In this document: positions 12,101 to 64,000 of the stretch, one piece after another
How positions within the stretch are numbered: position 1 is the first letter of the stretch
Layout: every line of letters starts with the position of its first letter
Origin: Thalia democratica
Lineage: Eukaryota
DNA: 64,000 nucleotides
Direction: 5' to 3'
NCBI GenBank assembly: GCA_965202585.1
Contig: OZ241830.1
Span: 38,006,001 to 38,070,000 of the forward strand
Position numbers and translations under genes: made by a program
The notes under the pieces: generated by a model
What the model was told of the DNA's origin: nothing
What the model saw: the letters and a program-made list of their open reading frames with translations, nothing else
The model's database searches: none

Positions 12101-13727
12101 AAAAAAAAATATAGAAAAAAAGCTCTTTTATTGGTTTTAGATTATGATTTATATTTTGTGCTTTACTTTTAGGTTGACTAACGACAAAAAAGTTTTAAAA
12201 GAATCCACTACTGAATTTACTAATTTACACTTGTGATAATAACAAACTGCTTTCAATATAATCTTGGTGAATAATTTGGAACTAAATACAGTTTTTATTA
12301 AATATGCATTATTAATTCTTGACTGCTAGTTTTAATTCAGTTAGCTTGAAAATTTAAATATTACTCCAGTAATATCAACATTTTACTAACTTGTAAAATT
12401 TACTAATGTAGCGAAACTTTAAATAAGTAAGCATGTTGCTAAATTAATAAACAGATTTTCAAAAGTTTTATTTATTAAATTTTTAATGAGAAACATTATA
12501 ATAAAATAAAGTATTTTATTAATGTTCAAAACACACCAAGTCAAAGTTTACAAACAAGAACTAGTGAAACAACTTAATAAAAAATGCATTCTTAAATCAA
12601 ATATGTATTTATTGCTATCATACTGTTTTTTAATTTTTATTTATTAGTTAAGATAAATTTTATATAATTTAAGATTTTATAAATATTAAAGTTTCATAAG
12701 AAATTAGTAGTTTTAAACAAGTACGGTTACTATAAAATATATTTTGTGTACTTTATATGTTATTTTGTTGTGGAGTTTAATGAATAATTTGTTTAATGTT
12801 ATTTTAAAAGTATAGTAAAACGTATAGTAAAACAATAATTTAATAAAAGTCTTCTTAAGCTATTACATAATACTAATTTTATTTAAAACAAACATTGTAC
12901 TAAATATTTTAAAATTAATTTAAACAGTATTTCTCATAACTATGTTGTTTAAAAATAATAACTGTAAGCACGTATGGAAAATTCACATCAAACAACTCAT
13001 GAGTCTTAACACGTTTTTATGACGTTTAAAAAAACTAAACATAAAAAATTTTATTAATAAACAAAGTTTACTATACAACACAGTGATTTTGAAGATTTTA
13101 TGCAATGTATGTTTATTTTCAGTTGAAATAAGTTGATTAGTATAATAATTAAAAAAAAAATTAAAACATAATATTACAGTTTAGTTTCGAGATAGTTTTG
13201 CATTTTGTTCAAATAAAAGTTTTCTTTGATCAACTAGATTTAATAAGTTTTACAATATATGCTTTCTTCTCAAAATAAAACAAATCAATTTATGGTTCTA
13301 GTAACAAACTCTTGTAAACAATTCTTATACATCACACTCAGGTTAAAAACTATTAGGTTAATACTTATGTTAACAAAAAATATATTTCAACTTATGAATT
13401 TTACAAAACATTATAATAATTTGTTAAAGTATGTAAAAAAAATTTCACAAACTAAAACTAAACTAAACACCACGCCTCAAAACAAAACAAGTACTCATTA
13501 AGGGACTCGTGAAGATAATGGACAAGGGCACGTCGCTGCTGGCCAGCTTCATATCTGGACCGGTCCTGCTGACCATGCACCACAGATCGAGCCTGCCGCC
13601 CTTCAGGCACCTGTCCGTGCCCCACAGGACCGACGCGCACTACCTTCCTCTCTTGTACCTGTCCACGCTGTACTGCGTCGCCGTCATCTCTTTCAGCATC
13701 GTTCTCACCGCCGTCAACTTGGCTTGA
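3181..13727 (+). CDS. 14-exon amino-acid transporter (APC superfamily, Aa_trans/Trp-Tyr permease-like), 517 aa
   Basis: Exons 3181-3226, 3693-3808, 5092-5219, 5579-5761, 6312-6377, 6802-6925, 7321-7434, 8252-8361, 9354-9461, 9683-9725, 9843-9957, 11115-11220, 11794-11863, 13503-13727. All introns are GT..AG, phases are consistent, total 1554 nt ending in TGA. TM1 motif FFVTIATVLGAGILGLP, then TYALAGGEALAQLF, about 11 hydrophobic segments, C-terminus QPKGLVKIMDKGTSLL..LTAVNLA. Confidence 0.88.
4589..4815 (+). mobile_element. Degenerate hAT-like MITE (CAGGGTTTCC family)
   Basis: Begins caaggtttcc and ends with aaaacagtcttataaaac, resembling the right end of the 46822-47129 copy. No TSD recognised. 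Confidence 0.35.
7536..7840. mobile_element. Degenerate hAT-like MITE (CAGGGTTGCCA family)
   Basis: Clear right terminus tggcaaccctg at 7830-7840, degenerate left end tagagttgag, and internal cctggaa motifs shared with 21789-22140. Confidence 0.5.
8744..9204. mobile_element. Short non-autonomous Mutator/Foldback-like element in a transporter intron
   Basis: GGG..CCC termini. Imperfect TIRs (gggtaggagtcaaatatgcacgaagggaca vs reverse complement gggaacgggtcaaatatgcaagaagaca). Perfect 9-bp TSD gtttttact at 8735-8743 and 9205-9213. Confidence 0.85.
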
Positions 13728-16700
13728 AGTTTATTTTTAAATATTTAAGTAATTTTGATGCTAAAATTTTAAGTTTGAATTAATCGTACTAACTGCTTGG
13801 CTTTTAATCTAATTGTTATTTGTTTAGTTTGTAGTTTTATCAGTATTTAGCTTAAGACTGGATAATTATAACTTTTACAAAATTTTTAGTAAATAAAGGT
13901 GTTTATTTTAATTAGTTTATAGATTTTTTAATGCAGTTTTAATATCATTTTAAAGTAGACATAAAACATATTTTAAGTAGACATTTTTAGAAATCTCTTC
14001 AACACAAATACTTAAACTTTGTAATCAAAATTTACTCAAAGTTTTAATTTTACAGATCTTAAACTTTACTTCAATGTAGCATTTAATAACTTTTGTTTTG
14101 ATCTTTAAAGAAATATTCAGCATAGTTAAAAATTCTAATAACCGTTTGGGTTTTTTCTTGTACTTAGTATCACCTAAACTGCCTAGCTTTCTACAGTTTG
14201 TTTTGTCCTGAACATAAGTGTCTTAAACTTTTTTGATTCGTGTCTTAAATTTCATTCCAGTTTTAAGTTGTTGCTTTTAATAGCTATTATTTGATTGGTC
14301 AAAGTGCATTTCTAAAACTTGTTTTGGACATACTTAAAAAATCATGACTTTTTGTCTTATTATGTTTATTAATATGCTGTATTTAAACTGATTTAACCTG
14401 CTTAATCTTAGTAATCTGCATATATGTTGGTTTAACTTTAGAACTAAAGTTTTGAACCTTTAGATTTCATGGTAAGTTTTTGATCAGTAATAAAAGTTTC
14501 ATTCATTTTTGCAGCAAATCGAACTTAAGATAATGAAGTTTAAAAATCAGCCTTTGTTTACAATATTGTGACACAAAGCTCAAATTAATATTTTAATCTT
14601 CAATTGTGTGCCTATTTATTTTATTGTTTTATGTTTTGCACTCTTTAGTATGATAATATCGTTTTAATAATAATAAAGTCATAAATAGTTACCCGTTTGT
14701 TTACTTTTATCATGGTTTCAAGATGTTGTAAGTACAATAAAACATATAAAACGTTTTAAAATAAATAACTTTATTCAAGAACTAGTTATGTGTTTTTATA
14801 CTCTTAAAACTAACTTCTGTATATTACAACTGCTTATCTAAAAAAGAAATTTCGCAATCGTAAATGTTTCATAACTATATAGAAATCGTAGAAAATTTAC
14901 TACATTCACAAAGTCCTTGTTAACTTTAATGTAAAGTTTCAGATTCTTAGCATTACAAGTATAAGTTCGACATTTATTGTATGTAAACAAAAATATTTTC
15001 ACATAAAATGTAAGCTAATGTTTGTATTATTTAACAATTTACAACCGTGTTTTTTAAAATGACAGTTTTTTTTTTTTTGACTATAAGTTAGTTTTTATTT
15101 TATACATTTCTTGAGTTTTTTTTTCTTTCAAACTAAGAAGCATTTACCAAACCTACCCGTTCGATTAGTTGTATAATTCTGAAAGAAATGAGTTTCAAAG
15201 CTAAATAATGATAATGGTTATCGAACTTTTTTAGTGTCCTGTTTAAAAAGTTGAGTGTGCTGTATTCAACGGAACACAAAAGTGCATTTAGTTTGATGCT
15301 AAGATTTTAATTTTAGTTTCGACGCTTTTAAGTACACTTTTATGCGTACAACCACGATTTTATCTATTACTTCTACTTCTAAAAAAATTAAAAAAAAAAG
15401 TGTAAATCTTTCAAAAAAAAGTTATAAGAAAAGTATAAATGATAATTTTTAATAAATTTAATTAGTTCTTACTTAAGATATGTCATCTTAAAAAAATATT
15501 GACTGTATAAAGCTCTTATACAATTTTTACTCTTAGTGGTACTAAAATTAATAAAAAATAGCTAAAAATTAATTAATACTTACAGTTTATTATATGCTTT
15601 TATTTTTACAAAACAAATCAAGAAATCGTAACTACTAGAGGAGAAACAATGCACTTATTCATTCTTTATACTTATAATTTATGTGCGGTATTAGTTAGTA
15701 AAGATGATTATTTATTAAGTAAAGCATTTTTAAGTTTAAAAAGTAAATTTTTTAAACTCATCATACTCTTTTAAATCTAGTAATTTTCTTTCACCATTAT
15801 TTCTAACACTCAGCTTACACAGTAGACCCACAATTGGTGTTAAGAATTATTAAATTTTTCTTTGAAAGTTAGTGACCCGAAAGCCTATTTTCTAGCGCAT
15901 GTAGACCTTAAAATCAAGTTAAAAGTTTCCGTTTGCAACAAAGTTTATGCCAGTTGGCGCAAGGTAATTTAGGTGTTTGTACATTGATAAGCTTTTTATT
16001 TCAAAAAAAAACCAACTGTCTTTTAGATATTACTTTCACTTATTTATTTATAGTGTAAAAGAGAAATTTTAAAGTTTCGTTTAAGAAGTTTGTCCTAGTA
16101 ATTAGTTTGTTTTCATTTGAGGTTTTTCTCAAAAAAAAAGTAATTGTTATTTTATTTATAAAAGTTTTAATACTTTAGTTCTTTTATTGTAAACTTTTAT
16201 CGTTGATTCGCTTAAGAATAGTTTCAATTGTTTATCTCATAAATTTTAACAATAATCGATATTGATATTTCAGCACTTGGTTAACTATAAATTTTAAATT
16301 GTTACCTAATTTTTATTTTATGAATACTTTTTAGATTTTAATACACTTTCAGTTTATTCTTACTAAGATTTCGCGTTGAAAAGTCTTAGTCAAAATATCT
16401 TTACAACAACTTTTTATTATAATATTTGGTTTGTTAAATGCTTTAAAACAGTTATAAAACAATTTTCACATGACTCAAATATAATATCCTTTAGTTTTTT
16501 TAGTCACCGTATTCATTAAAAATACTCTAGATAGCTTTTTTTTTTTATTTCAGTAATTAGCTTTGGTAGAAGTTATTTTTGAATATAAAAATTTTATGTA
16601 TATCATCTACTAAATATTTACAAGCTGTTCCAACGCAAAAAATATTAAATCGCCTTATTTGAATTTTTAGTTAAACTAATTTTATCAGTATAAAAAAAAC

Positions 16701-48294: not shown

Positions 48295-49753
48295 TCAAAA
48301 CTGGGTAGCCACCGCAACCATTCGCGTCCACTTTTCCACGTGTCCCACCACCTCCCGCACCTGGTCCATCAGCTCACACAAGTTCCTCGTGCGCCTTTCC
48401 TCCACAAACCTCATCAGCCAATCACAGCTTCTCCTCACCCGCATTGCGCTCCTTAGCGCTCTTTGCGCCACCTCGTGTTCGGTAGTGGCGTCGCTGCAGC
48501 TCGGATCAACCAGATTTCCCGATGTGCGCTGATAAATTGTATTTGATTCAAACAGCAGAACTTCACAATTGATGATTGATATGAATTTACGAATGTTGAG
48601 CAGTTTGTTAAGTCTTTTAACGGGATATAAAGTTTTTAAAAAACTATATATGTTTGAAACATCGAGTTATTGTTATTTTATCCTAAAAAAGATTAAAAGA
48701 TATTTGTAACATTTTAGAAATTAAGTTATTTTTCTCTTAGTTTTCGTGGTTAACTTTAAAAGAAAATTTATGTAGTTATTATTTATACTTGCGCTTTTAC
48801 TACACACGAAAAAATCACCAGCCTCAGCCATTTTTTGCAGGGCGACATTGAAGTTATTCTGCACCTGATAAATTTCCCTGGTTTTTACCGGATCCGGATT
48901 AGAGCACATCCAGTGAATTTGGTAGGTGACCCGCTGCATCTCATACAATATATTCTTTTTTTCTTCTCTCACAACATTTTCTAAAACACGTTCCCTAGAA
49001 AAGTATAAATAAATAGACTGTTTTTATGTTTATTAGCTGTTTAACTTTTTTTTTATATACTATTTCATTATCTTTCTTTAATAATCTTATTAAGCTGTTT
49101 TGATACTTATCAAGTTTAAGTTTAGTAGTTTTCAGAAAAAGTTATAAGTTTATGATAAATAACGTTTTAAACAGAATTATAGTAAAGTTTTTTGTGAAAT
49201 AGACTTATAAATTTGAAACAGAAGCAAGTTTAGATAAATTTTTACTTTTAAGATAAATTAAACTTTTTTAATTTTTAAGGAGTTTGTCAACTAACTTTTC
49301 AGTGTTTTAAAAATTTTAAAGCTTTTATAATACTTTATTTTTCTTTCAAGCAAATAGTAAAACCAAAGTATTAAAATTAAAATTTGTATTTTTTTCAAAA
49401 ATAAAATTGCGTGACTGTTTTAATCTGTTAGCAATAACCTTTTATACTAGGTAAAAACTACAACTTAAAAATAAAATTGTATTATAGTCATCACATTATA
49501 AAACAAAGAACTGTTTCTTAAATTCTTTAGTTTTAAAAGTTTTAATATGTTCAATACTTTTGTTTGCAAATACAAACTTAATTAGTACTTGTTTGATTTC
49601 GCGTTTTGTTGAAAATAAGTTCTTTAGAAAAACAAAAACTTTTTATAAGTATTAAAAAGCAGAAACTAAGCAAAGTAAGCAAGTTTATTATTTTAAAAAT
49701 ATTAATATTACAACTTACTTTTGAAGCATCTTTCGTCTAAACAAAATGACCAT
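48295..49753 (-). CDS. 3-exon hypothetical protein, 151 aa, no recognised family
   Basis: Exons 49753-49719 (ATG..AA|gtaagt), 48994-48808, 48528-48295 (TGA); phases 2 and 0; 456 nt. The last exon is about 58% GC by hand count. Protein MVILFRRKMLQKERVLENVVREEKKNILYEMQRVTYQIHW...VEKWTRMVAVATQF. The exon 2 donor (gtgtgt) is the least certain junction. Confidence 0.7.
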
Positions 49754-52700: not shown

Positions 52701-54058
52701 AATTTTCACAATAACACAAAATGTGTTTAGTTAAGTATAGAAAACATTGTAAATATATTATTGTGTGCAATTGATGATAACAAGTAAAACACGGTTTAAA
52801 ATATCTTTTAATTTAAAAAAACATAAGCTTTAGATATATATTTTACTTCAAACTATCAGAAAAATGACTTTCTTGTAAACTATACAAAAAAGTAAAGCAT
52901 TATTTTTATTTAATTAGTTGGTTAAAGTACCATAAAAATTCTAGTTTACTGATTAAATAATTTGTTGTTAACTTGGTCCATTACTAATAAACGGCTGCCC
53001 ACCCCTGCTTCAAAAATAGCATTTTATGTTGTATAATTTGTATATATAAGTAGTTCTTGCAAACTTTTTTAATCAAAAATTTTTGCTTCATAATTTAAGT
53101 TTGATTTATTTTTTAATAATTACATGTAATTGATGTTTGTGAACGATTATAATACAATACAAGTTGTAAAACTTTGCATAAATTGTACTTGAAGTAAACT
53201 AATGAAACAATTATTTGTGAAATTAATTAAACGAAAACAAGTAAGCTTACCTAAACGTTTATGTTTCAATTAGGACTAGTTTTTCTTGAATTAATTTCAT
53301 GAATTTATAATGAAACTAAACTTGATAATTTATAAAACAAGGATTAATAACAGAAAATATAACATATTCATTACTTAATGTTAGGGATTTTTTATTTTAC
53401 TAACAGTAAAAATTTGTTGTGCTAATTAATAGTAAAAATTACTGTTAAGTTTTAGACTTTGACCATGTTGTTAAGTGTTGTTTACAAATATAGTACAAAT
53501 TAGTATAGAACTTCAGAACGGTTAATAATAGTACATAGAATAAGTAGGTTACATCGACATTATCACAAAACTATCGATAATTTGGTAGACTGTTTAAACA
53601 ATAAAATTACTAAAGTATTCGTGATAAAAAGTTAAAACTAAACAGTATTTATAAATAATGCATAAATCACTCTGGCTATAAATACTAAAATAGTCAGAAA
53701 TAAGTTCTAATAAGTTGTTTATACAAAAGTGTATGTTGATTAAAATCAAAGTTTTTTTTTTGAATATAAATTAAATATAAAAAAGTGTTATTAAACTTTT
53801 TGATAGAAAATTGATAATAGCAGACATATTGTTAAAGGGTTGCTTTAGCAAAAAAAATTGATAATTAATCAGTCTGATTTAGAGAAGATGATAAAATAAA
53901 TGTTATATATAATTAACAATCGTAGAAAATACTTACCTAACAACCGTATTTTATTTTGGACTCTACTAACTTTGTAAACTAAAACAAATTTCGTATTAAA
54001 TTATAAATATAATGAACACACATTAAATACTGATGAATTAGTAGAAATAAGTAACAAC

Positions 54059-54538
54059 TTAATTGGTGAAATACCCCGAATAAGGCTGGGCCTTCTTTCG
54101 CGCCACCTCTTCGTACTTTTGGCGGTCTTTTCTGAACAAAATGGCCGCTTCCTCATTAACCACCTCGGTCATGTCAGGGCTGATGAGCAGGTTGCCAATT
54201 CTCCTGAACACGTCACTGATGGTGAACCTGTCCGACCAACCGTCGCCCAGCATGTTCATACCCATTTCGCCCTTTCGGTCTGCCGTCTCGGCCACGATGT
54301 TGGGGTGGAAGATGCTGGTTGCCATGGTAACCAGGGGCGGGTTGTTCGGGTAGTCGGTGGGAAAGCTGACCCTGATGAGGAACTTTAGTCCCGCGTAAGG
54401 GGAATTTTCCGGCCCCATGACGTGCATTTCGTACCGGTAGAGGTTCATTTCAGACAAGTTTCTCAAGTTGAGGAGTTGGAGGGTCCGGAGGTGCTTCATC
54501 TCAGCCCTGATCCTCTTATCAGTTACCAAAGTTGACAT
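54059..54538 (-). CDS. Intronless E2 ubiquitin-conjugating-fold protein lacking the catalytic Cys, 159 aa
   Basis: Motifs GPENSPY, FPTDYPNNPP, IFHPNI, W at GDGWS, VNEEAA..YEEVAR. The region that is GxICLDIL in canonical E2s reads GEMGMNML. Confidence 0.88.
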   Translation of the reverse strand: MSTLVTDKRIRAEMKHLRTLQLLNLRNLSEMNLYRYEMHVMGPENSPYAGLKFLIRVSFPTDYPNNPPLVTMATSIFHPNIVAETADRKGEMGMNMLGDGWSDRFTISDVFRRIGNLLISPDMTEVVNEEAAILFRKDRQKYEEVARKKAQPYSGYFTN

Positions 54539-57501
54539 TTGAATGTTTGATATAATAAAGTTAAGGCTGTTTTGTAAAAATTAAAGTTTCAAAATAGTGT
54601 CGACCACCTTCTATGGTAGAATTATGTAAATAGATTGATAAGAATTACATGAAATCTTTGTGTATTTACTGTATAAGTTTAGCAATTTTATAGAAATATT
54701 TTATAGTATTTATTAAAGTTTTTATTAGAAAACAAAAATAATAATAACGCCTAAATCAATATAGAGTTTAAAGAAATAACAAGTAAGATAACACCATCAA
54801 CAAAATAATTTATTCAAACAGTTGTTTCAATTTAAAAAACTTTTAGATATCTTTTCATAAAACAAACTAATTTAAAAAAAGTAAATTCTATGTATAAATT
54901 TTCATAAAACAAAGTTTTAAACTAAGAAAAAATACTTGTTTATGTAACAATAATTTTTTCAACTAATGCTTGCAAAAATATATGTTTAAGAAACATTTTA
55001 GTGCAAAACTCAATTTAATTTGACATTTAAAAATGATATATAAACTTTGTTGCTCTGTAATGTATATACATAAAAGTCTTATTAATACTTCAAAAATATA
55101 AAACTTAAACATTTTCTTAATGTTTAATACATACTTTTGAAAGCATTAAACTTCACAAATATTATTTATTATTGCTTTGATTTTATAGTTTATTAAACAA
55201 GAACCTTCAGAAGAAACAGCCTTCTTAAAAGCAAACGTCCTTAAAAGGAAAATTGTGCTCACTACACGTTACTAAGCTTAAACTTTTATCAAAAGTAAGT
55301 ATACTTTTAAATATTTTTTTTTTAGAAAAGCATACTGGCCTAGAATAAAATACTTACTTTAAGTTAACATATAGGTATTTCATTGTAAGCATATTTATTT
55401 ATTAAACTTAAAAATGATCTTATAGCCCATACTTGAAAAAAATTGACTGAGAATGTTTAAACTTTGATCACTAAAGGCAGTGATTGAAAAATAAATTAAC
55501 TTGTCAAAACAACTACTGCTGTAGTCAATTTATATATTTATCTTAATGCTAAACAAAACAATTTAACTAACTAAATTAAACAAAACCGACTAACTAGCTA
55601 AAATTTTGTTAGAATTCTTGTAATAAGGTTAATTCACTACAAAAGAAAAGTTATAAAATTATCTAGTTTACTACACAAGTGAAGTACTTTTAATTAAGTA
55701 AGAAATACATTTAATGAACTTTCTATATACTAAAGTTAGTGTGATTTTTACTTATCGAACTTTACCTTTCTAACTCGTGATATAATTAACAAAAGTGCAA
55801 GTAACAGATTTTAAATGAGAGAAATTCACAAATATGAGAGATCTAACCTCATGGAATTTTTAGTGTTTTGTCTATTTTCATGTCGCAATATTATTAGTAT
55901 TATAAATGATTAGATTTAAAAAAATATGCAATATATAAGATGTAGTAGACTAAATTTTGTAAACATGTTGTTGTCACTATTTTTTGGTAATTTTTTTCAA
56001 TAGGTACTAAGTTCAAATGCAAAAATGTGATAAATATTTTTACGTTACGTTGTACAGAATTGTATAATAGTCGACTAACAACTAATTCATCTAGATAAAT
56101 TTTAATATTTAAAACAGTCAAAAAAGTAAAAGTATAACCATACAGTTTTTAATCAGATGTTAAAATTGCCACAAAAAATTTAAACTTTTGGGCAACTCAA
56201 TTCTTCGACGTTTTATTTTCAATTTTAAAGATTTTTAGTTCTGTATACAACTGACTACAACATGCATATAAATGTTTATTATTTGTCTGTAAATTTGTAT
56301 ATCTTAGTAGTATTCAACTAGGTGTAAATATAAACTGGCTTGTTTATATTGATACTTATTACTCAACTAAAGTTTTTTACTCAAACGATTAACGAAGAAG
56401 CTTTATCAAAAGAACAAAAGTATAGAAATATGAAAAATACAAAAATGAATATTTTTTTATACGCAAGCTTTTTCTTAGACTTACGACTTCTAAGTAATTA
56501 AATTTTCGATGGGCTTTGCTTGTTTAGATTTAAAGCATTTAATGCCCTGCTACGTAATATATGATAGAACAAACGTATAAGTGATATAAAATAAAGGTAA
56601 ATATATGTTGTTCATTATTTAAAATTCTTTAGTTTAAAATAAATATTTTAGCGGTTAAATTAGAGTTAAAATAATTTATAACTAGAGACTCATAACATTA
56701 ATACAAATAACAATACTGACAAGGTTTAAAAAACTTAGCTTTCAATATTTTTTTGATTTACTTCAGTGTTTTCAATTTTATTTAAAAATGCTGAGTCTAT
56801 GAAAATGTTTAGTATATTTTAAGAGAAGCAAACATTTTGGTAATTTTTTTTATTTTTGTCGTTAATGAGTAAAATAAACTCTAGTTATAAATATGAGTTG
56901 AAATTTAAAATAAGAAATTGAGTTAAAAATGCTTTAGTTATCTTAGATAACTTTAAACACTAAAAAATATATTTGTTAAATTAAGTTTAGTAACTTAATG
57001 ATACTATAAATAAACTACTAAAATATTCGTTATGGTTTAAGGAAGTAAGTCAGTTAACGTAGTATGAAAACTTTTTAAATTATATAAACTTCTAAATAGA
57101 ATAAAAAAAAATTAATTATTGATGTAACTATAGAAAGAAAGTAGAAACTTAGAGAAAACTAAATCAAAAACTTTAGTACTTTTAAATATTATTTTACGTT
57201 CTCATGAATTGGTTTTAAACATTTTACATACACACTATTAAGACAAGTAATTGCTTTTATTTTCTGTGATCTCTGATCTTCTGATTAAAAATTAACAAGT
57301 TTACTTGTAGTGGTCTTAAATTTATAACTTAAGTCTAATTTAACTATAGTTAAAAAAACTACATGTAGTTTATACTGTTTTTGGAATAATTAGAATTGTT
57401 TCAAATTTAAGTTTTACAATTTTACCACGGTAACTACAATTAGAATATACTTTTAGTTTGCTTAAGATATTTTATTTACTTTTCCTAACTAAATTTTAGA
57501 A

Positions 57502-57776
57502 CAAGGGTCCGCTGACATTCTATTAGTATAGTTTAAAAAAAAACAAATTTTAAACAAATGCATGAAATTACACTATTAAATTCATAATTAGTAAATACTA
57601 GTGCTTCATCAGTGCATAATTCACCACATTTTTGGTTTAACGTAGTATTTTTTATTGATTACTACAACTATTTTAAATAACTCTGATCTGAGAAAGACTT
57701 TTTATATGATGTGCTGCCAGCGAAAAATTAATCAAGTGAAATAGGCCCGTTACTTGTACAAGTCTGCGGACCCCCC
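57502..57776. mobile_element. Degenerate hAT-like MITE
   Basis: gggtccgctgac near 57505 pairs with gtctgcggaccc near 57762 (11 of 12 match). No TSD found. Confidence 0.5.
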
Positions 57777-58226
57777 TACTTTAAGTTGTAGTTAAAAAAC
57801 TAAAATGTAAACAATAATTTAAAAACATCTTTTTTTTTTTCTGCATTTTTTAATTTTAATTTTTGTTTTTATATATAAACTAAAATTAACAGAGCTTTAA
57901 ATTAGATCAACTATTTTTAAAACATTATAAAACTTATATTGACAATCAACGTAATGATATTGTAAAAATATTTATTAAATTGTAAATTCTAAACAAATTA
58001 AAACTACTGTATTTGTTAATAAATATATTGCTTTCAAAAAAATGCAAGTACAGAAGACAATTAGTTTTTAAATAAATTGATAATATGCAATAAAATAAAG
58101 TAGTCAAAAGAAATTGCCATAAATAGACAACAGTAAAAAACAAATTTCAAAACGTTTTAATAGTTGATTATATATAATTAACAGTTGTAACAAATGATTT
58201 ATGAAATAGAAAGTAATGAAGTAAAA

Positions 58227-58733
58227 TCATTTATGAAATTTTTTACTTAGTTTCTCTTTGGCGCGCTTTTCATACATTTCCCGGTCATTTGTGTACAAAA
58301 TGGCCGCTTGCAGGTTCACCACGAGACCAGGGTCCAAATCGGGGTTCCGCATCACCGACTCCAGCCTCTAAAATACGTCACTTATGTTCAACCCCTTCTC
58401 CCACCCGGACCCCAGATAATCAAGCCCGATCTTGCCGTGGGGGGCGTCCTCCACACAGGGGTCGTCCGACAAAATGTTGGGGTGGAATATGTACGTGTTC
58501 ATGCACAGCAATGGCGGGTTGCTAGGGTAGTCGATGGGAAAGTGGACTCTGATCAAGTACTTCTTCTCAAAGTAGGGACTTCCCTCGGGTCCGGTGACCG
58601 CGACCTCCCACCAGAAGAGGTTGACTTCCGACTTGATCTTGGTTTTGAGGATGCCGCGAGAGGCGAGATTTTTCATCTCTTTTCTTATCCTTACAGCGGT
58701 ACTTTCCGTGATGTTCTCAGTTGGAAACGACAT
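58227..58733 (-). pseudogene. Second intronless Cys-less E2 paralogue with an in-frame TAG at codon 122 (nonsense allele, readthrough or base error)
   Basis: GPEGSPY, FPIDYPSNPP, IFHPNI, GKIGLDYL, then SDVF*RLESVMRNPDLDPGLVVNLQAAILYTNDREMYEKRAKEKLSKKFHK*. TAG at 58370-58368; the frame continues to TGA at 58229-58227. Confidence 0.75.
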
Positions 58734-61700
58734 TTTAGGTGCTATTGTGCTGAAAAATGACTGTGTGAATTAATTGAAATCAACTTTTTTGTAATAATTG
58801 TAAAATATCTACGCTTACTTGTAGTAAGTACTAAAACTTACAAAGTAGACTATTACAAAACTAAAAGACCTTGAATATAAGTTTATTAAAATGTATATAT
58901 TCCGTTTTTTTACATCATATAAAAAACGTAGAATATATTTGAAATCAAGTTTTATATAAAAAATAACCTGCAAAACTTTAAAAACACGAAAAATTTGCTT
59001 CGTTCAATGTGTTGAAGTTAAACCCGATTTTTTTAATAATTAAATTAAAAAAAAATAAAAAATTCAAACACAATTTTACTTTGTTAAGTTTTTTACTCTA
59101 GAAATATAAAAAATGAAAAATAAAAATGTCATTTTCTAAACTGCAAAGTACTTAAGTAAGAAATACCTGTTAAACTTATGTTTTTGGTAGTTTAGAATTT
59201 TTACTTGTTAAATTTTGTTTTAGTTTTAGTTTCATTATTTGCGTTAATAATAAATTTTTTTATAGAAAAACGTAAAAAACAAAATACGACTTTTTGAATC
59301 TGAAGTAATTAGATACAGACAATAAAAAAGTTTCTTATCTTTACTTTGACTAAAATATTTCATTATAAATATATACTATAACGAAACTTAAAGAAACAAG
59401 TTTACCAAAACCAAACATTTAAACCACAAAAAGTTACTATGTGTACAAACTTTCTTTGACAATAGACAAATGAAAATAATTTTTACTAAACAGTTTAATT
59501 TTTATAAGTTGATTATATGAAATAATTTAGACAAATAAACATTTTTCTGTTAACACAAACTTAAGCATAACTACTTTTTATATAATAATAACATTTTCAT
59601 TAGGATCAGAAAATAAAATATTTGGTACGCTAAGTTTTGTAAACTTACTAACAATGACAAAATAGATAATTAAATATTTTTTAAGCAACTTTCTTCCAAA
59701 TAAAAGTACTTTTTAAGAAATTAAGAAGCCATAAAAACGTTTAAGTGCTTTCAAATTTTAATAGTTGAGTTTTTTTGTACTAACTCGGCTTACTCCAAAG
59801 TCTAACTGATATAAGCTTAACTTAGTAAACAGAACAATTGAAAAACAGTTTATATAGTTTTGTTTCTAAATTTGTTTTTAATTAAAATTTTTTGAACTTT
59901 GATTTTTGATTTAAACATATAAAAACTAAATAAACAACAAACTAAAGCTTTTGAATGTGTTTATAGCCAATAAGCCATGAACATGAAAATTAAAAAGTAA
60001 TTTATTCAAACAAGTCCCGAAAACAACTAATTTTGTTTAAAACCATTGCAAGTAATTACTTAGTTTTCTAGAGTAAACATGTTTTGTTTTTAAACTACTA
60101 TTGACTAACGTTTTATAAAAAATGCAGAAATTTTTTTATCACTAACTTTTTTTAATTGTATGAAAGAACGGAACAATATATAGTTTATAATTTTTTAAAT
60201 GTTAAAATGTTAAGTAATTTTGATTCAACAAATTTAACATTACACACTTCAAAAAGGTTTTTGCTAAAAAATAAAATCATCACTGACATTATTTAAAACT
60301 TATGCAAAAATAATATCTAAGTTTCTATCTTGATTAAAATTTAACTGGTTAGGAATTTTGATTGAAATAATTTTTAACTCTGAAAAAAATTACCGATTAA
60401 AATTAAAACTCCTTAAATTTTCACAAAAAACTTATGCGATTTCAAAATATTCTTTTATTTGCTGTTGTCACGTTTTCTATCTCTATGTGTATGAAATATA
60501 TTTCTTGCAGCATTTACAACAATAAACAGCAAATAAGTTAGTAAAGTTTAAAAAAAAGCTAACTAGAACAAAATAACTAAAGCAACAAATTTTTTCATTA
60601 AATTTATTTATTAATTGACAATTTAAAACTAATTGTTATAGTATTACTAGTCTCTAGTAACTATTTTTAAATAAAAAGTTTTATCAAAAACAGAGTATTC
60701 AAACAAAACTGCTAAAGCTTTTGAAATTACTTCACTTAAAATATCAAAATATGCATCGAGGTTACGAACAAACTTTATTTTTACTTTTAAGTATTCGTTA
60801 AGTACTCGAAACTATGTTAAGTTTTCAAAATTATTTTTTTTGACCTTCAAGGTTTTCCATTGGTTTTTAAACGTAATTACTTATTAAGTTTTGTTATTTT
60901 GTGGAAAAATTTGTTAAAGGTTTTATATAATTACGTAAAATTTTAAGCTAAAGTTTTTATTTATTTACTTTATTTATGTAAAACTTATGCTTATGTATGC
61001 TGTTTAAGAAATTCATCAAAATTTACTTTTTTAGTTGTTTGTTTGTGAAAATTCATTTAGTCAAATATCATTGTTTGTAAACGTATAAACTACTTACTTT
61101 ATGCTTACTTTAAAACAAAAACCCTATCATATGTAGGTTATTTGTTAATATTTTTATACTTCTAAAGTAACTTACTATAATTTATTTATTAAAAGAGACT
61201 TTATTGTTACAGTATTAAGTAAAGTAAAAAATGCAAAAATTATGTAACTGTTATAATTATAAGAAAGTAAATTTGGTTTTTAACTTATTACAAAATGTAA
61301 AATGATTTTAAAGTTTAGTATTTTTTTGTTTTCCAATCAGTTTATGCGTTCTCCATGAATGTAAAACTGAAATAAAAATTACATTAGTCAACTAACTGCA
61401 AGTCAACCTTAGTCAACTAATTTTTGTTGTTATAACAAAAGTTCCAAACGATACAAGTTTGTTGGCATGACGTAGAACCATCAAAGATCTCGTCTACTAC
61501 GTTCTTTTTGTAACAAAAAAAAATATTAAAAATATTTTTTTTTGTATATCTGCGAACTACGGTTTTATAAGTTATGATTAGTAAACTACATACTTTTTAT
61601 AACTTAGCTGTTTCTTATGAAATTAGTCATTTAACTTGAAGATGATTAATGTTTTGATAGCAAACTAATACTTGAGTGTTTTTATGAAGAACTTTTTTTC

Positions 61701-62386: not shown

Positions 62387-64000
62387 CTAATCCATTTTCA
62401 ATACAGTAGTTTGTACAGAAATCGTTGGATTTTCGATGTCTCTTTTGCTTTGTACGATTCTTAGATCAATGTCAGCAACTTTTGGTGGTTCTCCATTTTG
62501 TTTTTGCGCTATTTAATTAAAATCAGAAAAATTAAAAAGCTTTAAAAGTTTTAAATAAACTAAAAACTTTTATTTTTTTTGCTATTAAAAAAAGTCCTCA
62601 TGGTTTTGTTTTGACAACAAATAATTTTTAAGTAGTTAGCTTTTAGCACAAATAGATGTAATACAATATACCTTTTGTCTAAATCTTGCTGACTTCGTTC
62701 GTCGAAAAATGTGTCTTTTTAGTTAGCTTTTTATAGAAAAAAACTTTCATGCCGTTTTTAAAAATACATATTTTTCGTAAAAATTTATTTCGCAGTAAAA
62801 AATAATAATTCAAGTCGTTTGTAAATATGCACACTTTTTGAAAAAAAATATTTTGCAGTATATTATCAATCATAATACTATTAACAATTTAATTAATATC
62901 TTTAAACTATCTTTAGCACGGTTTCAAAAACACCGTATAAATTTTAAAGAAAATAATAAGTTTTGAAATTGAAAGTGATAGAATGAGCTTACCGTCTTAT
63001 ATTAAGTACTAAACATTGTTAACACAATCACTACGCTTTGGTTAAACTTTGTTGTGAACCATAAAAACATAAAAAACGTTGTCACTTTTATAACAACATG
63101 CTAACATTTGGACGAAAAACGACTTTCCTAAACATTGCTTAGCTTCAATTGAGTATTTATGAAGATGTTATAAAAACTTTCAGCAAAATTAAATGTGTAA
63201 ACTAGCAAAATATAAACTACGTCTTATATTGTATGTAAGAAAAAAAAATCAAAGCATAAAAAGACTGTTTAATTTGTACATTTAAACCTACTTAATATTT
63301 CTTGACCTGTTGAAACATCTTGTAAAACATAATAACTTACAAATTAACTTCAAATTTTAAAAGTATGAGGAACCTAAATATACTGTTGATTCCCAAATAC
63401 TTAACTAGTAAACCTGCTCAATCAACACTTACTATGTAATTTTGACCAGAGTTTCTTAAAGTGGCTTATATGGCTACCTTTGAGGCATCTTAGTAAGTCA
63501 AGGGGTGAAAAGCTAGAAAGGTGTAATTATTAAAGGGGCCGTAAGAAGTACTTGGTGCTTTTAAGAAAAAGTCCGAATAATATTCTTCTACTAAATATTC
63601 TGAGGATTGTATTGAAGAGCAAAAAAAAGAGGTTTTAGGTACATTTCAAAAGATTTATTTTTTAATTTGATATTCTGAGCTTTGTAGCAACAAAAAAAGT
63701 TTCAAAAACAATTTAAGGAAGATTTGAAACTTACACTGGATATTTCGGGATTTGTAATGAGTAAGAACGTTCATTTTGTATTTTGTGTAATAGGAGCGTT
63801 TATGAAATTGAGTTTGGGAAACTGTGACTTAAACATTGTTAAATTCGTAGCTCAAACAAACTATTGCAGTAAAACCAACCTTCTACTGCGGCCTGAGTTG
63901 TTTTTAGGATGTGCTGCATTGTTGATGCCACCTTTTCCATGGATAGTAGCAAGTCTTGTGGATGTCTGGATGTCCAGGCAAGCAACAGGGAAGCAAAAGC
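62387..64000 (-). CDS. PDXK: Pyridoxal kinase, last two exons (gene continues beyond the window)
   Basis: Exon 64000-63880 (AFASLLLAWTSRHPQDLLLSMEKVASTMQHILKTTQAAVE) splices in phase 1 to exon 62508-62387 (AQKQNGEPPKVADIDLRIVQSKRDIENPTISVQTTVLKMD*). This matches the recalled PDXK C-terminus FAAMLLAWT.KHP..LRMVQSKRDIEDP..VQATVL. Absent from the ORF track. Confidence 0.92.
63447..63826 (+). mobile_element. Degenerate hAT-like MITE (CAGGGTTT family) in the last PDXK intron
   Basis: Starts cagagtttc, ends gggaaactgtg, and contains aagatttgaaacttacact shared with 24370-24556. Confidence 0.55.

What the first reader, a model, noticed from the sequence alone, without database searches (positions are those of the whole stretch)
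54059..58733. Tandem pair of intronless pseudo-E2s sharing a Cys-to-Gly active-site change
Seen: two same-strand, GC-rich, intronless E2-fold ORFs about 3.7 kb apart, roughly 40% identical by eye. Both keep HPN but have Gly at the catalytic Cys (GEMGMNML, GKIGLDYL), and both have an insertion between HPNI and the following Gly (about 5 and 9 aa relative to UBE2D). Known: catalytically dead E2 variants (UEV1/MMS2, AKTIP, TSG101) act as ubiquitin-binding adaptors and usually also lose HPN. Inference: a retrogene-derived, lineage-specific UEV-like family that lost catalysis before duplicating and then persisted, implying a non-catalytic role such as E3 decoy or chain-specificity partner.
Basis: partly seen in the sequence, partly recalled or inferred. 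Interest (0 to 1): 0.75.

Follow-up and report, generated by a model that had tools for sequence, protein, structure and literature searches.

The report
Cysteine-less E2 look-alike gene pair
Two neighbouring genes in a very AT-rich marine animal genome (probably a salp) encode ubiquitin-conjugating-enzyme look-alikes that selection has kept for a long time with glycine in place of the catalytic cysteine, so they most likely work by binding partners rather than by passing ubiquitin on.

Summary
Two same-strand, coding-intron-free UBC-fold genes lie 3.7 kb apart. Both keep HPN, both have Gly at the catalytic Cys position, and both carry a 5- or 9-residue insertion after HPNI.

All 11 metagenome alleles read CAG there, including a contig 97.6% identical in DNA. 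The stop is therefore a private null allele or an error, not family decay.

The pair belongs to a small family that I found only in marine metagenome contigs, mostly Tara Oceans.
- **Origin:** the family has one origin and two subclades, copy-1 type and copy-2 type. Gly therefore predates the duplication.
- **Selection:** dN/dS is 0.13-0.24, and the Gly codon varies synonymously.
- **Closest active E2:** UBE2D, at 36-37% identity.
- **Catalysis:** the copy-1 subclade has no cysteine at all.
- **E3 contacts:** the RING-contact residues F62, P95 and A96 are replaced. That argues against an E3 decoy and for a ubiquitin- or E2-binding pseudo-enzyme.

Retrogene origin and expression remain untested.

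The scan has already noted other Cys-less E2 families elsewhere in this genome: Ser variants, dead-E2/Deltex fusions, and one UEV with a loop insertion that may belong to this family. The pair is a new UEV-like family, of moderate interest.

The parts
54059..54538 (-). Copy 1: intact 159-aa single-domain UBC-fold gene without any cysteine (stop TAA 54059-54061)
   Evidence: ORF list. Pfam UQ_con 6e-28. AF2 UBC fold, with best Foldseek matches to UBE2D. No Cys. A 98% identical allele and an 86% identical relative are intact in Tara Oceans contigs.
54260..54262 (-). Copy 1 codon GGT = Gly93, at the position of the catalytic Cys85 of UBE2D
   Evidence: Alignments to PDB E2s and to a UBE2D2-type protein. 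The family uses GGT, GGC and GGG at this codon.
54299..54307 (-). Copy 1 HPN motif (His78-Pro79-Asn80), retained
   Evidence: These columns are invariant in the family alignments.
58227..58733 (-). Copy 2: 168-codon UBC-fold gene interrupted by one in-frame TAG (121 aa + stop + 46 aa, terminal TGA 58227-58229)
   Evidence: Sequence. Pfam UQ_con 3e-17 for the first piece. The second piece aligns to copy 1 residues 113-149. Intact 168-170-aa alleles occur in metagenomes.
58368..58370 (-). In-frame TAG in copy 2; relatives have CAG or CAA (Gln)
   Evidence: DNA alignments with L006-L009 and with L016, which is 97.6% identical and reads CAG. All 11 cluster members have Gln here. The truncated 121-aa product is not in the 15-billion-protein collection.
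58425..58427 (-). Copy 2 codon GGG = Gly103, at the position of the catalytic Cys
58476..58484 (-). Copy 2 HPN motif, retained
54567..54580 (-). Pyrimidine/A-rich tract ending in CAG, 28 nt upstream of the copy 1 ATG. Candidate 3' splice or trans-splice acceptor (inference).
   Evidence: Conserved in L001-L003. An equivalent CAG (TAG in one contig) lies roughly 10-40 nt before the ATG in every family contig with enough upstream sequence.
58750..58757 (-). TTTTTCAG, 16 nt upstream of the copy 2 ATG. Candidate acceptor site (inference).
53950..53955 (-). AATAAA about 104 nt downstream of the copy 1 stop. Candidate poly-A signal (inference).
   Evidence: Sequence. Conserved in L001 and L002 in alignment A1.

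Best explanation
The two genes belong to a small family of single-domain UBC-fold proteins derived from UBE2D/E-like stock. The family is restricted to a pelagic-tunicate (probably salp) lineage.

In this family the catalytic Cys is replaced by Gly, a 5-14-residue loop is inserted between HPN and the former active site, and the canonical E3-contact residues are replaced. These proteins cannot carry ubiquitin as a thioester. Copy 1 and all its relatives have no cysteine at all.

The family has nevertheless been kept under purifying selection in two old paralogous lines. I therefore read them as pseudo-enzymes that act by non-covalent binding. The most likely modes are holding ubiquitin or a ubiquitin chain, or partnering an active E2, as UEV1/MMS2 does with UBC13 and as the Morgue UEV domain does with K48 chains. 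Soaking up RING E3s is less likely.

**Shown:** fold, loss of Cys, single origin, selection, and restriction to marine metagenome contigs.

**Inferred:** the binding partner, and expression.

Copy 2 in this assembly carries a private nonsense change. It is either a null allele or an error.
For: - **Fold and family:** Pfam UQ_con. Best PDB sequence matches are UBE2D/UBC4 at 5e-24 to 1e-21, with Gly aligned to Cys85. AF2 pLDDT is 80.7 and Foldseek TM is about 0.8 to UBE2D structures.
- **No nucleophile:** the copy-1 subclade is Cys-free, and no Cys position is shared across the copy-2 subclade.
- **Selection:** dN/dS is 0.21-0.24 for win1 vs L003 (p 2e-7), 0.13-0.15 for win2 vs L006 (p 7e-8), and 0.2-0.45 for deeper pairs. 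The Gly codon varies among GGT, GGC and GGG. Against the 97.6% identical L016, 8 of 12 coding differences are synonymous.
- **One origin, two subclades:** support is 99 (quick tree) and 100/97 (careful tree), with the catalytic column left out.
- **Restriction:** only five 50%-identity clusters among 1.84 billion representatives, all from ENA marine metagenomes. The next single-domain hits are canonical UBE2D/E proteins at about 120 bits.
- **Loss of the E3 surface:** F62, P95 and A96 are replaced. F62A plus P95D abolishes RING binding in UbcH5B (PMC6349121).
- **Precedent:** the Morgue UEV domain has Gly at the active site and associates with K48 polyubiquitin (PMC3787007).
Against: - No RNA data exist for this organism in the served runs, so expression is unproven.
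- No binding partner is identified. The backside Ser22 position is not conserved, and the alignment there is uncertain.
- Copy 2 is broken in this assembly.
- In Morgue, replacing the active-site Gly did not change the over-expression phenotypes (PMC3787007). Conservation of Gly therefore need not mean a specific chemical role.
- The active-site loop is the least confident part of the model, with pLDDT 56-68.
Confidence: 0.7

Rival explanations
1. E3 decoy. The dead E2s would bind RING, U-box or HECT ligases at the normal E2 site and block or redirect them.
For: The UBC fold and the helix-1 basic residues (RIR/KEM) are retained. Descent is from the promiscuous UBE2D/E group.
Against: F62 is N/T/K, P95 is D/K/G/N and A96 is R/S/Y/G/D in every member. 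The F62A+P95D pair is used experimentally to make UbcH5B unable to bind RING E3s (PMC6349121).
Confidence: 0.1
2. Neutral relics. The two ORFs would be decaying retrocopies of a UBE2D-like gene without function.
For: The coding regions have no introns. The catalytic Cys is lost. Copy 2 carries a premature stop in this assembly. No RNA evidence exists.
Against: Intact ORFs occur in at least ten diverged metagenome lineages. dN/dS is 0.13-0.24 and significantly below 1. The paralogues are 47% identical yet still open. The stop is absent from all other alleles. The upstream motif is conserved.
Confidence: 0.03
3. Still catalytic through a relocated or unusual nucleophile. Candidates are the Cys in the inserted loop of copy 2 (DDPCVED) or a Ser, Thr or Lys.
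For: HPN is invariant. Copy 2 and its close alleles have a Cys in the insertion, and P0004 has one in its longer loop.
Against: The copy-1 subclade has no Cys at all. The loop Cys is absent from P0007, P0020 and P0021. No Cys column is shared across the family. The loop sequence is poorly conserved.
Confidence: 0.05
4. A detached piece of an older two-domain protein. The family would descend from the degenerate second UBC domain of tandem UBC-pseudoUBC proteins and work as the trans partner of an active E2.
For: In the site-heterogeneous tree the family groups with support 99/99 with the second, Cys-less domains of tandem di-UBC proteins: P0019 from the rotifer Rotaria, and P0022, P0025 and P0027 of unknown origin.
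Against: Identity to those domains is only 26-29%, against 36-37% to UBE2D. Both groups are fast-evolving, so long-branch attraction or convergence is possible. The insertion is absent from those domains. The only named source is a different phylum.
Confidence: 0.12

Closest known systems
UBE2D (UbcH5/UBC4/let-70) active E2s
   Same: Closest sequences and structures: 36-37% identity, Foldseek TM about 0.8, single UBC domain of about 150-170 aa. HPN, YPxxPP and Trp93 are kept.
   Different: Cys85 is Gly. There is a 5-14-aa insertion after HPNI. F62, P95 and A96 are replaced. The PLVPEIA segment is replaced by VVNEEAA. Copy-1-type proteins carry a conserved extra C-terminal tail, AQPYSGYFT.
UEV domain of Drosophila Morgue (protostome F-box/UEV protein)
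   Same: A UBC-type domain in which Gly replaces the active-site Cys and is conserved across species. The Morgue paper stated that no other UEV has an active-site Gly (PMC3787007).
   Different: Morgue is a roughly 490-aa zinc-finger + F-box + UEV protein of protostomes. The proteins here are single-domain, have no F-box or zinc finger in Pfam, and come from a tunicate-like genome. No Morgue-type architecture appeared among the 150 best profile hits. The Gly is therefore most likely convergent. I did not compare directly with a Morgue sequence.
UEV1A/MMS2 (UBE2V1/V2) and TSG101 UEV
   Same: Cys-less UBC folds that act by non-covalent binding of ubiquitin and, for UEV1/MMS2, of an active E2. 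This is the working model proposed here.
   Different: The TSG101-type UEV Pfam family was not hit even at E up to 1. All 60 listed PDB matches are UBE2D/UBC4, not UBE2V.
Second, degenerate UBC domains of tandem di-UBC proteins (e.g. Rotaria CAF1120203.1)
   Same: Cys-less UBC domains with a similar FP(L/T)DYPxxPP region and loss of F62. They group with the family in trees at 99/99.
   Different: They are part of 300-420-aa multi-domain proteins, lack the insertion, have Ser/Asn/Gly at the site, and are only 26-29% identical.
Other Cys-less E2 families noted by this scan in the same genome (Ser-for-Cys family of about 50-60 copies; dead E2 fused to Deltex RING-DTC)
   Same: Same genome, same theme: intact E2 look-alikes without the catalytic Cys, reported by earlier agents as being under selection.
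   Different: Those have Ser, not Gly, or are fused to a ligase. I could not compare sequences, so the relationship is untested.

Membership tests
UBC-fold superfamily (Pfam UQ_con) | Significant match to PF00179 and the alpha/beta UBC fold | tested here: met
   6e-28 and 3e-17, both above the gathering score. AF2 model with helix, four strands and three helices. Foldseek probability 1.00 to UBE2D.
Active E2 conjugating enzymes (UBE2D/E type) | Catalytic Cys in the HPN-x7-C context | tested here: not met
   Gly at the aligned position in both copies and in 12 of 13 family rows. Copy 1 has no Cys at all.
Active E2 conjugating enzymes (UBE2D/E type) | E3-contact residues F62, P95 and A96 | tested here: not met
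   Replaced in all members.
UEV in the broad sense (Cys-less UBC-fold variant kept by selection) | UBC fold, no catalytic Cys, evidence of constraint | tested here: met
UEV in the broad sense | Non-covalent binding of ubiquitin or of an active E2 | not testable with these tools
   Needs pull-down, ITC, NMR or complex modelling.
UEV1A/MMS2 (UBE2V) clade | Closest relatives are UBE2V proteins; HPN lost | tested here: not met
   The best 60 PDB matches are all UBE2D/UBC4. HPN is invariant.
TSG101-type UEV (Pfam PF05743) | Match to the UEV Pfam family | tested here: not met
   No hit at E up to 1.
Morgue | Gly at the active-site position of the UEV domain | tested here: met
   The feature is as described in PMC3787007.
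Morgue | N-terminal C4 zinc finger plus F-box preceding the UEV domain | tested here: not met
   159-170-aa single-domain proteins; Pfam finds only UQ_con. The ORF starts directly before helix 1.
Retrogene | No introns in the coding region where typical genes of the genome have them | tested here: met
   Continuous ORFs. The kinase and amine-oxidase neighbours are split into exons.
Retrogene | Poly-A remnant, target-site duplications, and an intron-bearing parent gene elsewhere | tested here: inconclusive
   No poly-A tract or flanking direct repeat is seen, but the duplication is too old for these to survive.

The most novel reading that the evidence does not exclude
Glycine at the dead active site would be a selected feature that arose independently here and in protostome Morgue. 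It would open the former catalytic groove, together with the new loop, to hold the C-terminal tail of ubiquitin or an E2~Ub conjugate non-covalently. The family would be the free-standing descendant of the pseudo-domain of an ancient tandem E2/pseudo-E2 protein, now working in trans with an active E2 to set chain type.
Probability: 0.12. Interest if true: 0.6.

Novelty: new variant of a known kind. Interest (0 to 1): 0.4.

Why it matters
Cys-less E2 variants are few and are mostly ancient: UEV1/MMS2, TSG101, AKTIP and Morgue. Here a young, lineage-restricted family has kept HPN, fixed Gly at the catalytic site as Morgue did, and stripped off the RING-contact residues. That makes it a natural experiment on which parts of the E2 fold matter for non-catalytic work.

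Earlier notes of this scan report Ser-for-Cys and Deltex-fused dead E2s in the same genome. Together with those, the pair suggests that this salp-like lineage has diversified pseudo-E2s to an unusual degree, which could be tested with ordinary biochemistry. Without expression or binding data it remains a well-supported annotation rather than a mechanistic discovery.

Tried and rejected
- **RNA evidence.** The look-up of sequencing runs gave no RNA holder. Read laying on four DNA/contig runs was too noisy to show the base at 58370.
- **TAG as a reassigned codon.** Rejected. Relatives read CAG or CAA there, and family genes end in TAA or TGA followed at once by AT-rich non-coding DNA.
- **Relocated catalytic Cys.** Rejected.
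- **Foreign or viral origin because of high GC.** Not supported. Other exons in the window reach GC3 of 0.56-0.62, and published salp genomes show CDS GC far above genomic GC (PMC13746493).
- **Further copies in the window.** None found by tblastn.
- **Ubiquitin-related neighbours.** None. The neighbours are a kinase, an amine oxidase and unassigned ORFs.
- **Rfam.** No hits.
- **ESM Atlas.** Only generic E2 clusters.
- **Literature on UBE2NL/UBE2DNL as retrogene analogues.** Nothing usable in the held papers.
- **Organism of the di-UBC relatives P0022 and P0027.** Could not be resolved.
Full report
**What is there**

On the minus strand of a 25.6% GC window lie two GC-rich islands, with GC 0.53 and 0.50 and GC3 0.74 and 0.69. 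Their flanks are at 0.20-0.21.

Copy 1 (54059-54538) is an intact 159-codon ORF. Copy 2 starts at 58733 and runs for 121 codons to an in-frame TAG at 58368-58370. It then continues in the same frame for 46 codons to a TGA at 58227-58229.

Pfam assigns both copies to UQ_con, at 6e-28 and 3e-17. The 46-aa tail of copy 2 still aligns to helices 2-4 of copy 1. The copies are 49% identical over the first 110 residues and about 47% overall. Only the coding parts are still alike at the DNA level, so the duplication is old. tblastn finds no further copy in the window.

**The active site**

The best matches among solved structures are all UBE2D/UBC4, at 5e-24 to 1e-21. HMMER aligns the Gly of GEMGMNML to the catalytic Cys.

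P0123 is a UBE2D2-type protein that is collinear with human UBE2D2 and nearly identical to C. elegans UBC-2. I used it as a ruler and obtained the following:
- H75, P76 and N77 are invariant.
- C85 is Gly.
- The stretch between HPNI and that position is 12 residues in copy 1, 16 in copy 2 and up to 21 in relatives, against 7 in UBE2D.
- F62 is N/T/K, P95 is D/K/G/N, and A96 is R/S/Y/G/D.
- PLVPEIA is replaced by a family-specific VVN(E/Q)(E/K)AA.

An AlphaFold model of copy 1 has pLDDT 80.7 and pTM 0.75. It shows the standard UBC topology and superposes on UBE2D structures with TM about 0.8. The region around the insertion is the least confident, with pLDDT 56-68.

**Relatives**

Word-based searches found relatives only on short marine metagenome contigs, mostly Tara Oceans (PRJEB4352).
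- For copy 1: 98%, 86%, 63% and 42% identical proteins of 159-193 aa.
- For copy 2: 95% and 54% identical proteins of 170 aa.

The contigs are genomic, with AT-rich flanks collinear with the window.

An exhaustive HMMER profile search of 1.84 billion representative proteins found five single-domain family clusters: P0001, P0004, P0020, P0021 and P0026. All are from ENA marine metagenomes. The scores then fall to canonical HPNINSNGSICLDIL-type UBE2D/E proteins at about 120 bits. No annotated tunicate or other named proteome contributed a member.

The window's 25.6% GC matches the 25.3% published for the salp Thalia democratica, whose CDS GC is about 17 points higher than its genome GC (PMC13746493). 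Earlier notes of this scan call the genome a pelagic tunicate. I treat 'salp-like pelagic tunicate' as a well-founded inference, not a demonstrated fact.

**Selection**

| Pair | dN/dS | Fisher one-sided p |
|---|---|---|
| Copy 1 vs L003 | 0.21-0.24 | 2e-7 |
| Copy 2 vs L006 | 0.13-0.15 | 7e-8 |
| Deeper pairs | 0.2-0.45 | at most 3e-5 |

The codon at the former catalytic position is GGT, GGC or GGG in different members, so Gly is kept through synonymous change. One divergent member (P0026) has Asn.

The copy-1 subclade contains no cysteine at all, and no Cys position is shared across the copy-2 subclade. A relocated nucleophile is therefore very unlikely.

**History**

I left the catalytic column out of the trees. 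The family is one clade, with SH-aLRT 99 in a 172-row tree and 100/97 in a 63-row LG+C20 tree. It splits into a copy-1-type and a copy-2-type subclade. Loss of Cys, the Gly and the insertion therefore predate the duplication that produced the tandem pair.

The nearest outside rows are the second, Cys-less domains of tandem di-UBC proteins, at 99/99 support. One of these is from the bdelloid rotifer Rotaria; the others are of unknown origin. These domains are only 26-29% identical to the window proteins, against 36-37% for UBE2D. Both groups sit on long branches, so I regard this link as a lead that may reflect long-branch attraction.

Independent Cys-to-Gly UBC domains also exist in a cotton protein (P0028).

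**The stop in copy 2**

The TAG differs by one C-to-T change from the CAG or CAA in every other allele. L006-L009 show this, as do all 11 members of the 90% cluster.

L016 is 97.6% identical over 633 nt and differs in the CDS by 8 synonymous changes, 3 replacements and this stop. The truncated 121-aa product is not in the 15-billion-protein collection.

The stop is therefore private to this assembly: a segregating null allele, a very recent loss, or an error. The one read-laying run did not list that position, so I cannot tell which.

**Gene structure**

The coding regions are uninterrupted. The neighbouring protein-kinase gene (31.7-33.1 kb) and amine-oxidase gene (43.7-46.1 kb) are split into exons. 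This fits retroposition but does not prove it. No poly-A remnant or target-site duplication is visible, and the parent gene could not be examined.

Every family contig with enough upstream sequence has a pyrimidine/A-rich tract ending in CAG (TAG in one) roughly 10-40 nt before the ATG. This holds between paralogues whose synonymous sites are saturated. In DNA of about 22% GC a CAG in a 40-nt stretch is expected about one time in six, so this is unlikely to be chance. I read it as a 3' splice or spliced-leader acceptor. It is an inference that needs RNA data. If it is right, the genes are intronless only in their coding part.

**How it most likely works**

Without a nucleophile these proteins cannot accept ubiquitin from E1. 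They have also lost the residues through which UBE2D binds RING, U-box and HECT ligases. The natural F62N/P95D state of copy 1 mirrors the F62A/P95D mutant used to abolish RING binding (PMC6349121).

What is conserved is the following:
- the UBC core, HPN, and the Gly-x-x-Gly stretch;
- a family-specific face of helix 2 (DVF-R/Q-R) and the VVNEEAA segment;
- in copy-1-type proteins, a disordered C-terminal tail, AQPYSGYFT.

The best-supported reading is a non-catalytic binding module of the UEV kind, binding ubiquitin, ubiquitin chains or an active E2. The closest functional precedents are UEV1/MMS2 with UBC13 and the Gly-bearing UEV domain of Morgue, which associates with K48 chains (PMC3787007). 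The partner is inferred, not shown.

**Novelty and score**

This is not a member of the UBE2V, TSG101 or Morgue families (see the membership table). It is an independently derived, previously undescribed UEV-like family. It is a second animal case of a conserved active-site Gly, which the Morgue authors considered unique in 2013.

The scan has already flagged other Cys-less E2 families in this genome: a Ser-for-Cys family of about 50-60 copies, dead-E2/Deltex fusions, and a UEV with a roughly 10-aa loop insertion that may belong to this family. I did not test those claims.

I rate the finding as a new variant of a known kind, with interest 0.4. The annotation is solid and the evolutionary pattern is tidy, but there are no expression or binding data.

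Noticed in passing
window 58368-58370 (-): The premature TAG in copy 2 is private to this assembly. Every metagenome allele reads CAG or CAA, including one 97.6% identical in DNA. It may be a segregating null allele of a gene otherwise under selection.
   Followed up: partly
window 54567-54580 and 58750-58757 (-); L003-L013 upstream regions: A pyrimidine/A-rich tract ending in CAG lies roughly 10-40 nt upstream of the ATG in all family lineages (TAG in one). It looks like a splice or spliced-leader acceptor, so the genes may be intronless only in their coding part.
   Followed up: partly
window 54062-54094 (-), C-terminus of copy 1: The tail AQPYSGYFT(N/L) is nearly invariant between copy 1 and its 63% identical relative P0003, but it is predicted disordered (pLDDT below 50). 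It is a possible short docking motif and is absent from copy-2-type proteins.
   Followed up: no
window about 57480-57680 and 59030-59225: Contig depth rises three- to five-fold in all four runs, with many loose ends at 57648/57682 that continue into GC-rich GCGGCC-type sequence. These are probably copies of a dispersed repeat or small mobile element flanking copy 2.
   Followed up: no
window 13461-13780: An isolated GC-rich island (GC 0.51-0.58) has open frames of about 90 aa on both strands and no Pfam match. It may be an unrecognised small gene or exon.
   Followed up: partly
P0019 (Rotaria sp., NCBI CAF1120203.1), P0022, P0025, P0027; loci L014, L015: These proteins have two or three UBC domains in tandem. 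The first keeps the catalytic Cys and the later ones are degenerate. Their dead domains group with the window family in trees.
   Followed up: partly
P0028 and cluster (Gossypium, XP_052490294.1): A cotton protein annotated as E2-17 kDa has two UBC domains that both carry Gly at the catalytic position. This is an independent plant case of Cys-to-Gly.
   Followed up: no
window 48298-49023 (-) and 63688-63999 (+): Moderately GC-rich open frames of 100-123 aa have no Pfam match. They are possible exons of unannotated genes next to the E2 pair.
   Followed up: partly
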